A DNA stretch of 64,000 bases from Oikopleura dioica (lineage: Eukaryota > Animalia > Chordata). Position numbers and translations under genes: made by a program. Below are positions 51,366 to 54,513 of the stretch, in pieces. The stretch is taken from NCBI GenBank assembly GCA_907165135.1, contig OU015568.1, positions 434,001 to 498,000 of the forward strand, given 5' to 3'. Numbering within the stretch: position 1 is the stretch's first letter; each line of letters starts with the position of its first letter. The notes beneath the pieces are model-generated. The model searched no databases and had not been told where the DNA came from. It saw nothing but the letters and a program-made list of their open reading frames with translations.

Positions 51366-51740
51366 ATCGCCGATTTTTGACCTGCTTTAATTCATTGAGC
51401 ATGAAAAAGAGACTAAAAAGATTAAGCCTGAAATAAAAAATACACAAAAATCGAATGAAAAACTCGTTTTTTTTTTTACAAAAAGACGCAGCCATGGCAG
51501 AATGTTTATTTTTCGGGACATAAAATAAAGAAAAAAGGGATGAGGAAGAAACCACTCGGCTGGGCAGGAGTTAAAGAACTTGAAAGGAATAAGGAACTAC
51601 CAGAGTTCTAGAGATAGAGAGGAGAAGATCTGTCGCGGGATTTTTACGAGGATTATCCGCAGAAGCGTTTCTAAATTATCAAAATCCCGTGTCCTAGGCG
51701 TTATCATCATAATACCAGCAAGTGCTTTTTTCTCTCTAAA

Positions 51741-52795
51741 TTACGAAAGATAAAGCCCACACGCAAAGCCGCCGCTGCTCAGGCGATCGAGACCGCGGAA
51801 GCAGGGAACTTGCGGGCGACGATATCGCGTTGTCGGCTCGGAGAAGTCAGACAAGTGCTTACGGATACGGTCGTGCGTCGGAGCTCTAAAATGACAGATA
51901 AGAAGAGGCAGTTGTGAAATGGGGCTTACGGGTTGAGGGACCAGCTCTTGAGCTTGTGGAATCCGACGTTGCTTGTTAGTCGACGATCCTTTTTGTTTTT
52001 CTAAATACAGCTTATTAATGTACCATCTGAGGGCTATTCTATTATAATGAGTCCATCCGACTTGCTCGTATACCTATTAATTTTTGATCGGACGAATCGT
52101 GATTACAAAAATTTTCATTATTTTAAAGAAAAGAGCCAATTATGGTTCTTCCACACATAAGAATTAGTCTGGAAGAATCTTCCAGGTAGATATCATTATC
52201 TTGACATTTTTGGTATTCATTTTTCTTTTCTAGGAATCTGGAATAAAATCAAATATTTTTCGAATATCAATCAAATCAATCTTGCGTAATCAAACAATTA
52301 TTTGCTTTTAATTTTCATAATACCCGTTTATTTCGCTTCTTTCTCTGCTAAAAACACATAAAATGTAGCATTTTATCATCAGTAGAAAGCATTTAACATT
52401 TTAAATTTGGCCTCACCTTATCCTTGTTTCGTCTTCTTCGTCTATTTTTCTTCTCTTTCTCCTTGCGTCTTCTTTCCTTCTTGCTTCTTCGATGTTTGCG
52501 GTCATGTCTCAGACTTCGACGGCTTCTGTCCACGAGGGAATCATCGTCTGCAAGATTTTCTGAGATTTCAAACTTCGTGATTTCTGGAATCTTTGAGATA
52601 GCATTCTGATCTTCCAAAACTATGTCTGTCAATGGCAGGCTTTCCAGGGCTAGAATTATCAATTTTTTCCGATTTTCTTTTAAAAAAATACTTTGAAAAT
52701 CTCTTCTATGATTTCAGTTAGGTTTTATTTGAGCCCAAGTTCCTGTTAGTAAAATGAAAAGTTGTTGTTAGGACGGCCAAATTGACGAATTTCAT
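51741..52795 (-). CDS. Prepropeptide with a C-terminal natriuretic-peptide-like disulfide ring; 4 exons (52795-52743, 52639-52417, 52000-51930, 51885-51741)
   Basis: Spliced translation MKFVNLAVLTTTFHFTNS-LPLTDIV...DRSRRSLRHDRKHRR...KDK|KNKKDRRLTSNVGFHKLKSWSLNP|APTHDRIRKHLSDFSEPTTRYRR-PQVPCFRGLDRLSSGGFACGLYLS*. Introns 2 and 3 are GT-AG and frame-consistent; intron 1 is modelled as GA-AG. Confidence 0.7.
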
Positions 52796-53024
52796 ATTTT
52801 GTTTCTCTTTTTTGGTTTTTCTTGTGTCTGTGATATGGGATAGGACTAGCGACTTCCGGATGCTGGGCTCTGTGTAAATTTGAACACCTTCCGATTTTCA
52901 CAAAACTTAGTTCTGGGTTTTCCCATTTTGAAACTTCACTGCAAAAATTTTTGAGAATAAAAGGGTCAAAAGTTTATTTTAGAGGAAATTTTAAGATATG
53001 AAATCTTCGTCTTTTTTCGAGAAT

Positions 53025-53181: not shown

Positions 53182-53619
53182 GTTTTTTAGTCAAGATCTT
53201 TTGGTTGGTCATTAATCCCTCTCCTAGGGTTTCAAATTCGTGATGGCTCTCTTTCTTTTTTTTTCTCAAAATGGAAATGTACAGGGGCGATATTAAAGAC
53301 TCCAGTTGGAATCACTAGGATTTATTCAAGAATTGAAGTTCAATCTCTGCAGGAGATGGAGCTCCTGACAGCGTTGCGCGGGGACGTCACGATCACCCCC
53401 GCGGCGAATCTACGCCAGAGAACATAAAAAAGGCCACCGAGTCGATAGATCAAAAATCATGAATGGGAGCAACTTGCTTTCATGTTATCAAACACGTGAT
53501 TCGACGCAATCTTTCGATATATCGCAAATACTCATTTTCAACGAAATTATTTTCTGATGGAAATTAATATTTTATTTTAAACAGTAGAATATATTTTTCA
53601 TCAACTATGTTTCATTTCG

Positions 53620-54513
53620 TTATTGTATTATTGTCCACGTAATTGGTATTTTTGGAAAAGATCTCATGCGAGGTCTCCTTTTCCATTTATGTTCCCAGTC
53701 GTCTGTCAAGGCGCCGAAATACATGGTTATTGTGTCGTCGCGGCCAATCATAGTTTTTCCGTAAACATAAATTTTACTGCCGAATTCTTCCTCCTCCTCT
53801 TCTGTCGTCGACCAATGACGTAATTCATCTTTTGGGTCGGACGACTGCGCGAAAATCTCAAAATTTCTTTTTTCGGGAGATTTGAGAACAATTTTGTAGC
53901 GAAATTCGTTATAAAATTCTGTTTTTACACCTCTTATCCAGTCTAGGAGAGTTTCTGGGTCGTCGGGGCCGGTCCAAAGGACCCTTTCTATAATGAAGAA
54001 TTGAATGCTGAAGTCGTTATAAGTAATTGGGTATCGAAAAAGTTGATACACCTCTTCGTTATTTGTTTTGTAGAATTCTGCCGAGGTGAAATCGATTTTC
54101 AGATTGACGATCTTTCTTCCAGCGACAACTGCCTTCAGGAAGAGGTAAACATCTGATTCGTCGTTTGCGACTCGAGAATCAATTTAAAGGATGACAAAAA
54201 ATTGAGAGTGATAAAATTATCAATTTCTTAAATTTTGCCATCCATGTTCATAAGTATCTATTTTTTGAAGCATTTTCTTGTTTGATAGTTTTTCGAGATC
54301 GTCTTGAGTGAGATCATTTTTTTGTTGAAGTTCGAGCTGCTGAACTTTCTCTCGAAGAGATGCGATAGTATTCTCCAGTCTGACAATGTGGCTCATTGGG
54401 CGGTTTTGAACAGATACATCTGATTCTCGTGAATAAGAAACGCTGCTCTCTGAGATATAGGTTTGATCATCGCAAGTTTGAAAAGATTCAGCATCCTCAT
54501 TTTGTTCTGACAT
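53620..54513 (-). CDS. Lineage-specific protein: acidic N-terminus, coiled coil and unknown C-terminal domain
   Basis: ORFs 54220-54513 and 53620-54051 joinable across a short intron near 54185-54260. Confidence 0.45.

What the first reader, a model, noticed from the sequence alone, without database searches (positions are those of the whole stretch)
51741..52795. Candidate natriuretic-peptide-like hormone in a tunicate
Seen in sequence: a signal peptide, an acidic then polybasic pro-region, a furin site RYRR (51827-51816), then PQVP-C-F-R-G-L-D-R-L-S-S-G-G-F-A-C-GLYLS*. The two Cys (51803 and 51761) are the only ones in the precursor. Established: vertebrate rings are CFGxxxDRIGxxSGLGC (CNP: CFGLKLDRIGSMSGLGC), C-terminal and released by furin or corin. 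The CF, LDR(L/I), S and G-hydrophobic-small-C positions align, with a 15- rather than 17-residue ring and a short ANP-like tail. To my knowledge NP genes are described only in vertebrates, including cyclostomes. Inference: this could push the NP/guanylyl-cyclase system back to the tunicate-vertebrate ancestor. The ring exon has no ATG, so the ORF track misses it.
Basis: partly seen in the sequence, partly recalled or inferred. Interest (0 to 1): 0.95.

Follow-up and report, generated by a model that had tools for sequence, protein, structure and literature searches.

The report
Natriuretic-like ring peptide gene in Oikopleura
A small, already annotated but uncharacterised Oikopleura dioica gene encodes a probable secreted precursor ending in a strongly conserved 15-residue disulfide-ring peptide that resembles vertebrate natriuretic peptides more than chance predicts, yet it fails every formal test of family membership, so common ancestry is unproven.

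Summary
The same four-exon gene is intact in the Atlantic lineage (CBY24936.1) and in a third lineage from marine metagenomes. Whole-gene dN/dS is 0.11-0.18 at dS up to about 1.1. The PQVP-ring-tail segment is among the most constrained parts (0.03-0.08).

The ring (CFRGLDRLS[SM][GS]GF[AGR]C) resembles NP rings beyond chance:
- hhalign gives P of about 6e-4.
- Column shuffles reach the real score in 0 of 750 full shuffles and 2 of 750 block shuffles.
- Random rings match with P between 2e-4 and 3e-6.

It still fails the family tests. The ring has 15 residues, not the invariant 17. CFG, DRI and SGLGC are not kept. Pfam ANP gives no hit, and an HMM of NP precursors is nominally significant for one lineage of three.

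The proposed furin site RYRR is not conserved (HYRR in one lineage, HYRP in another). An invariant RIRK lies further upstream. The signal peptide is weak.

A 2019 paper (PMC6878697) already listed an uncharacterised O. dioica NP-motif protein and called it convergent.

Best reading: a lineage-restricted secreted ring-peptide precursor. I put true NP orthology at about 20%.

The parts
52743..52795 (-). Exon 1: start codon plus a 17-residue hydrophobic leader (MKFVNLAVLTTTFHFTN), the putative signal peptide
   Evidence: The leader is conserved as MKLLNLAFLT[TAV]FH[FL]TN in the other lineages. Its hydrophobic core is weak, with mean Kyte-Doolittle 1.7-2.2 against 2.8-3.1 in vertebrate NP precursors.
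52640..52742 (-). Intron 1, non-canonical GA..AG
   Evidence: Follows from the P0001 sequence (FHFTN|SLPL) compared with the genomic sequence. The spliced junction is seen directly in the cDNA-like contig L002 and in the MERC protein P0008. The intron is retained and read through in the JGI gene call P0007.
52417..52639 (-). Exon 2: an acidic stretch, the invariant LVDRSRR site (DRSRR = 52516-52530), and the start of a polybasic run of about 45 residues
   Evidence: AlphaFold2 predicts the polybasic run as the only confident element, a helix with pLDDT 87-96.
52324..52347 (-). Alternative 24-nt mini-exon (QRKKRNKR) used in isoform t1 (P0004, 171 aa)
   Evidence: A flanked 21-nt equivalent is present in L001, L003 and L004.
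51930..52000 (-). Exon 3: the end of the polybasic run (KNKKDRR) and the start of the conserved middle peptide (..GFHKLK..)
51886..51929 (-). Intron 3, GT..AG, 44 nt
   Evidence: The equivalent 40-nt GT..AG introns sit at the same codon position in L001, L003 and L004.
51741..51885 (-). Exon 4: the invariant APTHDRIRKHLSD, a variable linker, PQVP, the ring, the tail GLYLS and the stop codon
   Evidence: dN/dS of the PQVP+ring+tail segment is 0.03-0.08.
51858..51869 (-). RIRK: the last basic site before the ring that is invariant in all lineages, and so a candidate processing site
   Evidence: Alignments. Cleavage at this site is inferred, not shown.
51816..51827 (-).
   Evidence: It reads HYRR in P0002 and L003, and HYRP in L001 and L004. 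The next residue (P1') is Pro.
51759..51803 (-). The 15-residue ring CFRGLDRLSSGGFAC (Cys144 to Cys158)
52796..52935 (-). Conserved proximal 5' flank (promoter or 5' UTR) containing CCGGAAGT at 52852-52859
   Evidence: Mean column identity is 88% across three lineages whose synonymous sites are near saturation.

Best explanation
Gene g8529 of Oikopleura dioica encodes a small prepropeptide so far found only in the O. dioica species complex.

Inferred mechanism:
- The 17-18-residue hydrophobic leader directs the protein into the secretory pathway.
- Proprotein convertases cut at the invariant basic sites: DRSRR, KHRR, the polybasic run, KKDRR and RIRK.
- This releases a C-terminal peptide of 38-43 residues. 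In two of the three lineages a further cut at YRR could trim it to 24 residues.
- The peptide's two Cys, the only ones in the protein, close a 15-residue disulfide ring, CFRGLDRLS-x-x-GF-x-C, followed by the tail GL-x-LS.
- That ring peptide is the bioactive product and acts as an extracellular ligand.

The ring resembles the vertebrate natriuretic-peptide ring (CF, LDR[L/I], S-x-SG-[F/L]-x-C), so a receptor guanylyl cyclase is the most obvious candidate receptor.

Shown here: the gene model, its conservation, the purifying selection, and the better-than-chance ring resemblance. Inferred only: secretion, cleavage sites, the disulfide and the receptor. Whether the resemblance reflects common descent or convergence is open. 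I treat family membership as not established.
For: The annotation was built with RNA-seq intron and exon hints (PMC8008620). A cDNA-like contig L002 and the MERC protein P0008 show exons 1 and 2 spliced, and L002 also shows exons 2 and 3 spliced.

The same four exons, splice sites and open frame are present in L003 (Atlantic type) and in L001 and L004 (a third lineage).

Whole-gene dN/dS is 0.11-0.18 with dS 1.1. The ring segment has 0.03-0.08, with many synonymous changes in the ring and Cys codons.

The protein has only two Cys, and both are invariant.

Ring against NP rings:
- It is the best of 509 Cys-to-Cys segments in the window.
- Against random rings, P is 1.7e-4 (Okinawa), 3e-6 (Atlantic) and 2.4e-4 (third lineage).
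- Full column shuffles reached the real score 0 times in 750, and block shuffles 2 times in 750.
Against: - The hydrophobic core of the leader is weak, and no signal-peptide predictor was available.
- A conserved run of about 45 basic residues, predicted helical and itself under constraint (dN/dS 0.04-0.14), is unusual for a prohormone spacer. It would also suit a nuclear or nucleic-acid-binding protein.
- The dibasic site next to the ring is lost in one lineage.
- No peptide, expression-site or receptor data exist.
- No Logan transcript-derived protein for this gene appeared in the searches.
- Conservation is shown only across about 25 My, within one species complex (PMC11067885).
Confidence: 0.55

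Rival explanations
1. It is a true orthologue of vertebrate natriuretic peptides, closest to the CNP type. On this view it was inherited from the tunicate-vertebrate ancestor and shortened by one residue in each half of the ring. It would signal through an Oikopleura NPR-type receptor guanylyl cyclase to raise cGMP.
For: The Atlantic ring CFRGLDRLSMSGFGC aligns to CNP (CFGLKLDRIGSMSGLGC) with 11 identities plus 2 conservative matches over its 15 residues, with two 1-residue gaps. hhalign gives P 5.7e-4, and no full column shuffle out of 750 reached the real score. The ring sits at the C-terminus of a leader-bearing precursor, as in NP genes. There are weak collinear echoes of NP pro-regions: LVDRSRR matches the teleost CNP-1 processing site (..LVDRSRRGWNRGCFG..), and an H-x4-LPL-x-D..QN stretch aligns with the conserved NP pro-region. 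Receptor guanylyl cyclases predate NPs, and earlier readers noted such receptors in this genome.
Against: The 17-residue ring and the CFG / DRI / SGLGC residues are invariant in every NP retrieved and are not kept here. The position before the last Cys varies (A, G or R) where NPs have an invariant Gly. Pfam ANP gives no hit at E<=10, against 53 bits for a pike CNP control. An HMM of NP precursors scores Okinawa 1.9 bits (P 0.05-0.11) and the third lineage 0.3 bits (P 0.2-0.4); only the Atlantic form reaches 9.6 bits. The pro-region matches are not significant (P 0.014-0.086), and I noticed them post hoc among hits selected by shared words. With local composition kept, P is only about 0.003, which is modest for a genome-wide, many-family scan. 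No counterpart was found in any other tunicate, amphioxus or echinoderm protein among 1.8 billion representatives. Grandchamp et al. 2019 concluded such non-vertebrate motifs are convergent.
Confidence: 0.2
2. It is not a secreted hormone. On this view it is a small intracellular basic protein, nuclear, nucleolar or nucleic-acid-binding, whose long K/R/E-rich helix is the functional part. The C-terminal Cys pair and the NP likeness would then be incidental.
For: The polybasic run is the only confidently structured element (helix, pLDDT 87-96). It is highly conserved, including in the more diverged P0008 whose acidic part differs. The only Pfam matches, all far below threshold, fall on this run (POP1_C, CDC45, Spem1). 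The leader's hydrophobicity is low for a signal peptide.
Against: The segment under the strongest constraint includes the ring and tail, not only the basic run. Both Cys are invariant despite codon changes. An MK-hydrophobic leader encoded by its own first exon and an acidic propiece before multiple RXXR/RR/KR sites fit a convertase-processed precursor. The Pfam matches are low-complexity noise (E 0.2-9).
Confidence: 0.2
3. It is a chance open reading frame or an annotation artefact with no function.
For: The bare motif is expected about once per genome in six-frame translation. The gene has no homologues outside O. dioica.
Against: There are two independent annotations, a spliced cDNA-like contig, an intact frame and splice sites in four further loci, dN/dS of 0.11-0.18 at dS up to 1.1, and highly conserved 5' flanking sequence.
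Confidence: 0.03

Closest known systems
Vertebrate natriuretic peptides, especially C-type (CNP); Pfam PF00212
   Same: Both have a single disulfide ring at the C-terminus of a short precursor. Both rings begin CF, have a central [LM]DR[IL], and end S-x-SG-[LF]-x-C. Basic processing sites lie upstream. A short C-terminal tail follows the ring, as in ANP, BNP and DNP.
   Different: The ring has 15 residues, not 17. It lacks the Gly of CFG and the Gly after DRI. It has Leu in place of the invariant Ile, and the invariant Gly before the last Cys varies. There is no Pfam hit. The precursor carries a 45-residue polybasic helix and a second conserved middle peptide that NP precursors lack. The gene is known only in O. 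dioica.
The uncharacterised O. dioica 'natriuretic-peptide-like' protein of Grandchamp, Tahir and Monget 2019 (PMC6878697)
   Same: It is an uncharacterised O. dioica protein with no BLAST homologue, found by an NP-motif search (C-x12-18-C). It has two entries, which fits the allelic pair CBY24936.1 and CBY36825.1. In silico it docked into the NP pocket of human NPR3.
   Different: No accession or sequence is given in the held text, so identity with this gene is probable but unverified. The authors classed O. dioica as a protostome and reported a single exon and no cleavage. They did not examine precursor architecture or conservation, and they concluded the motif is a fortuitous or convergent resemblance.
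Osteocrin/musclin NP-like motifs (linear NPR-C ligands); recalled from memory, not checked with a tool
   Same: As I recall it, the osteocrin motif ..FG-x-PLDRLS-x-GS.. shares F, G and LDRLS-x-G with the Oikopleura ring. This would show that an LDR[LI]-centred motif can bind an NP receptor outside the canonical 17-residue ring.
   Different: Osteocrin is linear with no Cys ring. It is confined to vertebrates and regarded as derived from the NP family.
Echinoderm sperm-activating peptides (speract, resact): peptide ligands of invertebrate receptor guanylyl cyclases (established knowledge)
   Same: They give a precedent for a lineage-specific small secreted peptide acting on a receptor guanylyl cyclase outside vertebrates.
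   Different: They have no sequence similarity to this gene. Their precursors carry many peptide copies. Their function is in egg-sperm signalling.

Membership tests
Natriuretic peptide family (ANP/BNP/CNP; Pfam PF00212) | A match to the Pfam ANP profile at or above its 27-bit gathering score | tested here: not met
   There was no ANP hit at E<=10 for the Okinawa, Atlantic or third-lineage forms, whether as ring exon or full length. The control, pike CNP-1 (P0123), scored 53.1 bits.
Natriuretic peptide family | A 17-residue disulfide ring | tested here: not met
   The ring has 15 residues in all three lineages. All NPs retrieved have 17.
Natriuretic peptide family | The invariant ring signature C-F-G-x3-D-R-I-x3-S-G-L-G-C. 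The PROSITE-style pattern used was recalled from memory; the invariant columns were confirmed. | tested here: not met
   The regex fails for all three Oikopleura rings and passes for CNP, ANP and BNP. Kept residues are C, F, D, R, one G and C. Lost or altered are the Gly of CFG, Ile (now Leu), Leu (now Phe), and the final Gly, which varies as A, G or R.
Natriuretic peptide family | Statistically significant sequence similarity to NP peptides or precursors | tested here: inconclusive
   - hhalign on the ring gives P 0.002 and 5.7e-4, with probability 13-30%.
- Shuffles reached the real score in 0 of 750 full and 2 of 750 block runs.
- Shuffling each ring's own residues gives P 6e-3 to 2e-4.
- The NP-precursor HMM is nominally significant for one lineage of three.
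- PDB phmmer found no hit.
Natriuretic peptide family | The ring peptide lies at the C-terminal end of a signal-peptide-bearing precursor and is released at basic sites | tested here: inconclusive
   The C-terminal position is confirmed. The leader is plausible but weakly hydrophobic. The adjacent RR site is present in two of three lineages, and the invariant RIRK lies 28-33 residues before the ring. Cleavage has not been shown.
Natriuretic peptide family | Activates a particulate guanylyl cyclase (NPR-A or NPR-B type) or binds NPR-C | not testable with these tools
   This needs a cGMP assay with synthetic peptide. The only related evidence is the published in-silico docking of an O. dioica motif to human NPR3.
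Proprotein-convertase-processed neuropeptide or hormone precursors (general class) | An N-terminal signal peptide, a conserved bioactive segment flanked by basic sites, and stronger constraint on the peptide than on the spacers | tested here: inconclusive
   The ring segment has the lowest or near-lowest dN/dS, and the acidic spacer and linker are the most variable parts. However, the basic run is also constrained, and the signal peptide was not verified by a predictor.

The most novel reading that the evidence does not exclude
The ring peptide is a genuine, shortened natriuretic-peptide orthologue, or at least a functional ligand of an NPR-type receptor guanylyl cyclase, in a tunicate. That would place the NP-guanylyl cyclase hormone axis in the last common ancestor of tunicates and vertebrates. 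It would overturn the current view that NPs arose in vertebrates after their receptors.
Probability: 0.2. Interest if true: 0.9.

Novelty: new variant of a known kind. Interest (0 to 1): 0.55.

Why it matters
Natriuretic peptides are textbook vertebrate-only hormones, while their receptor guanylyl cyclases are ancient and have unknown ligands in most invertebrates (PMC6878697, PMC1868935).

A conserved NP-like ring peptide in the sister group of vertebrates gives a concrete and cheap test of that view: a synthetic 24-38-mer in a cGMP assay on a handful of Oikopleura receptors.
- If the assay is positive, it dates the NP axis to the tunicate-vertebrate ancestor, or it shows convergent evolution of the same pharmacophore. 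It would also deorphanise a tunicate receptor.
- If it is negative, the gene is still a well-defined orphan peptide-precursor candidate in a compact model chordate.

Tried and rejected
- **Pfam scans.** Scans of every exon and of the full-length proteins gave no ANP hit, only low-complexity noise (Med19, POP1_C, CDC45, Spem1).
- **PDB search.** phmmer with the ring exon found nothing.
- **First homologue search.** A homologous-protein run with the ring exon alone came back blank because of the length filter.
- **P0003.** This HMMER hit (690 aa, 10 stretches) is a translated tandem repeat with no Cys, so it is spurious.
- **L005.** This soil-metagenome locus is a chance match to the back-translated PQVPCFRG pattern, with stops all around it.
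- **BLASTP against a mudminnow CNP-1.** The alignment gave E 0.017. It was one of about 120 comparisons and aligns the Oikopleura leader with an NP pro-region, so I treat it as chance.
- **Full-length profile comparison.** The profile-profile match in the pro-region gave P 0.014-0.086, which is not significant.
- **AlphaFold2.** On the four-sequence alignment the mean pLDDT was 57 and the ring scored below 50, so it says nothing about the peptide.
- **Rfam.** Around the gene there is only a sub-threshold snoR1 match on the opposite strand inside intron 1 (27 bits against a 49-bit threshold).
- **Accession search in papers.** Nothing turned up for the protein accessions.
- **Upstream in-frame ATG.** The MGKPRTK.. 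start of the JGI model P0007 is not a conserved ORF. It has a stop in Okinawa and reads ACG in L003.
- **N-terminal extension of CBY24936.1.** The 81-aa extension is a mis-fused conserved non-coding element.
- **Synteny with vertebrate NP loci.** I did not pursue this. The neighbours noted in the window (S100-like, Rap1GAP, JmjC) are not NP-linked genes, and O. dioica gene order is scrambled (PMC11067885).

Full report
**What is there**

On the minus strand, window:51744-51884 translates without a stop to a 47-aa stretch ending RYRR-PQVP-CFRGLDRLSSGGFAC-GLYLS, followed by TAA.

These are 52417^52000 and 51930^51885.

An exhaustive HMMER search of 1.84 billion representative proteins with the ring exon found three hits:
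- P0001 (163 aa) is 100% identical and ends exactly at this exon.
- P0002 (250 aa) is 83% identical.
- P0003 is a spurious tandem-repeat protein.

The cluster look-up names the first two. P0001 is CAG5076726.1, Oidioi.mRNA.OKI2018_I69.PAR.g8529.t2, from Oikopleura dioica (Okinawa). Its sister isoform t1 (P0004, 171 aa) adds an 8-aa mini-exon at 52324-52347. P0002 and P0005 are CBY24936.1 and CBY36825.1 from the Norwegian reference.

The window is therefore O. dioica, and the gene is annotated but uncharacterised. The annotated model uses a non-canonical GA..AG first intron (52640-52742). The Okinawa annotation was made with RNA-seq intron and exon hints, and about 11% of this genome's introns are non-canonical (PMC8008620).

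**Is the gene real and conserved?**

A full-length search added marine-metagenome and metatranscriptome relatives (P0006, P0007, P0008). Fetching their contigs and scanning JGI metagenomes with the ring-exon alignment gave these loci:
- L001 and L004 are one lineage, seen in two independent samples.
- L003 is the Atlantic or Norwegian type.
- L002 is a cDNA-like contig in which exons 1-2-3 are already spliced, before a chimeric join at an A-run.
- L005 was a chance pattern match.

In L001, L003 and L004 all four exons, their splice sites, the open frame and the alternative mini-exon are intact.

Nei-Gojobori estimates:

| Comparison or region | dS | dN/dS |
|---|---|---|
| Okinawa vs the others, whole gene | about 1.1 | 0.14-0.18 |
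| L003 vs L001, whole gene | 0.47 | 0.11 |
| PQVP+ring+tail segment | - | 0.03-0.08 |
| Acidic spacer and pre-ring linker | - | the most variable parts |

The PQVP+ring+tail segment has the lowest or near-lowest ratio of any region, alongside the middle region and, in the L003-L001 pair, the basic run. Both Cys are invariant through TGC/TGT changes.

The three lineages match the published Okinawa / North-Pacific / Atlantic cryptic species, which split about 25 and 7 Mya (PMC11067885). A chance ORF is excluded. However, conservation is demonstrated only within this species complex.

**Anatomy of the precursor**

The parts run in this order:
- Leader: MK-[FL]-[VL]-NLA-[VF]-L-T..FH-[FL]-TN, encoded by exon 1.
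- An acidic stretch. It is replaced by a different, longer sequence in the more diverged P0008.
- The invariant LVDRSRRSLR.
- A K/R/E run of about 45 residues.
- The invariant KKNKKDRR.
- A conserved middle peptide (..GFHKLK..APTHD).
- The invariant RIRK-HLSD.
- A variable linker with a 5-residue indel.
- [RH]-Y-R-[RP]-PQVP.
- The ring CFRGLDRLS-[SM]-[GS]-GF-[AGR]-C.
- The tail GL-[YN]-LS.

It reads RYRR in Okinawa, HYRR (dibasic but not RXXR) in the Atlantic form, and HYRP in the third lineage, where two independent contigs agree. In every case the P1' residue is Pro, which by established convertase specificity rules is unfavourable. The nearest invariant basic site is RIRK, which would give a 38-43-residue peptide.

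The leader's hydrophobic core is weak. Its best 9-residue mean Kyte-Doolittle value is 1.7-2.2, against 2.8-3.1 for pike CNP and macaque ANP leaders.

AlphaFold2 on the small alignment is confident only for the polybasic helix.

Secretion, cleavage and the disulfide are all inferred.

**Is it a natriuretic peptide?**

Formal tests fail:
- Pfam ANP gives no hit at E<=10 for any Oikopleura form, whereas a pike CNP control scores 53 bits.
- phmmer against the PDB finds nothing with the ring exon, while CNP-22 and ANP queries retrieve every NP chain.
- Every NP retrieved has a 17-residue ring with invariant CFG, DRI and SGLGC. The Oikopleura ring has 15 residues and lacks the Gly of CFG. It has Leu for Ile and Phe for Leu. 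It varies (A, G or R) at the invariant last Gly.

The resemblance is nonetheless better than chance:
- The Atlantic ring shares 11 identities plus 2 conservative matches with CNP over its 15 residues.
- The ring is the best-scoring of all 509 Cys-to-Cys segments in the window's six frames.
- Random rings of window composition reach its score with P 1.7e-4 (Okinawa), 3e-6 (Atlantic) and 2.4e-4 (third lineage).
- Shuffling each ring's own residues gives P 6e-3, 6e-4 and 4e-3.
- hhalign P is 0.002 with three sequences and 5.7e-4 with four.
- The real score (28.6) was reached by 0 of 750 full column shuffles and by 2 of 750 shuffles that keep local composition.

Other tests weigh against a strong claim:
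- An HMM of 12 NP precursors scores only the Atlantic form above its decoys (9.6 bits, P 2.5e-4 and 3.7e-3). Okinawa scores 1.9 bits and the third lineage 0.3 bits, neither significant.
- Weak collinear echoes of NP pro-regions were noticed post hoc and are individually non-significant. One is LVDRSRR, identical to the processing site of a teleost CNP-1. The other is an H..LPL.D..QN stretch.
- This scan looks at a whole genome with many hormone families in mind.

Taken together, the similarity is suggestive of homology or convergence on a common pharmacophore. It is not proof.

A mixed Oikopleura-plus-NP profile search returned, apart from the Oikopleura proteins, only proteins carrying the Pfam ANP domain among its best 120 hits. 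All those with a species name are vertebrate.

**Literature**

NPs are treated as a vertebrate innovation (PMC1868935). [quoted passage not shown]
- They searched non-vertebrates with an NP motif and list an uncharacterised O. dioica protein with two entries and no BLAST homologue.
- Its motif docked into the NP pocket of human NPR3.
- They misclassified the species as a protostome and reported a single exon and no cleavage.
- They concluded the resemblances are fortuitous or convergent.
- No accession is given, but the description fits CBY24936.1 and CBY36825.1.

The resemblance has therefore probably been seen before. The precursor architecture, the splice structure and the cross-lineage constraint shown here are new.

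**Verdict**

The most likely reading (0.55) is a lineage-restricted, convertase-processed secreted precursor. Its C-terminal 15-residue disulfide-ring peptide would be the active product. A receptor guanylyl cyclase is the leading but untested receptor candidate.

True NP orthology gets about 0.2. An intracellular basic protein with an incidental C-terminal motif gets about 0.2. A non-functional ORF is essentially excluded.

The decisive experiments are simple: mass spectrometry for the peptide, and cGMP assays of the synthetic ring peptide on Oikopleura and vertebrate receptors. A search of other larvacean and tunicate genomes for intermediate forms would complement them.

Noticed in passing
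window 52324-52347 (-); L001 947-967; L003 about 2113-2133: An alternative polybasic mini-exon, 24 nt in Okinawa (QRKKRNKR) and 21 nt in the other lineages (RRKRQ[AT]K). It has AG/GT flanks and is conserved in position in all lineages. It accounts for isoform t1 (171 aa).
   Followed up: partly
window 53255-53460 (-): A non-coding element of about 200 nt lying 460-660 nt upstream of the ATG. Mean column identity across three lineages is 86%, although synonymous sites are near saturation. It contains AATAAA and may be the 3' end of the upstream minus-strand gene or a regulatory element. Rfam gave no hit and no covariation was found. The Norwegian model CBY24936.1 wrongly translates it as an 81-aa N-terminal extension.
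   Followed up: partly
window 52796-52935 (-): The proximal 5' flank is 88% identical across lineages and contains an ETS-like CCGGAAGT at 52852-52859. The upstream ATG (MGKPRTK..) is not a conserved ORF: it has a stop in Okinawa and reads ACG in L003.
   Followed up: partly
window 51684-51706 (-): A 3' UTR motif, TGATAACGCCTAGGA-nn-CGGGAT, is conserved 35-60 nt after the stop codon in Okinawa, L001 and L003. Its function is unknown.
   Followed up: no
window 52516-52536 (-); P0098 residues about 138-144: The invariant Oikopleura heptapeptide LVDRSRR is identical to the stretch just before mature CNP-22 in a mudminnow CNP-1 precursor. DRSRR is shared by the other teleost CNP-1 precursors retrieved. 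It is probably just a shared furin-type site, but it is collinear with the ring match.
   Followed up: partly
L002 1-979: A chimeric metagenome contig. Spliced Oikopleura mRNA (exons 1-3) is joined at an A-run to unrelated AT-rich sequence, one of whose ORFs hits Pfam TusA. It is useful as evidence of splicing but is an assembly artefact.
   Followed up: partly
P0008 (MERC, 109 aa): A more diverged relative. Its leader and basic run are the same, but its acidic region is different and longer, with a duplicated LVDR. It may be another Oikopleura lineage or species. Its C-terminal part is not available.
   Followed up: no
window 52648-52735 (+): A sub-threshold Rfam snoR1 C/D-box match (27 bits against a 49-bit threshold, E 0.01) inside intron 1 on the opposite strand. 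It is probably chance.
   Followed up: no
window 53620-54513 (-): The upstream neighbour on the same strand has coding exons ending ..KIPITWTIIQ. I did not identify it. Its adjacency to this gene is kept in L001 and L004.
   Followed up: no
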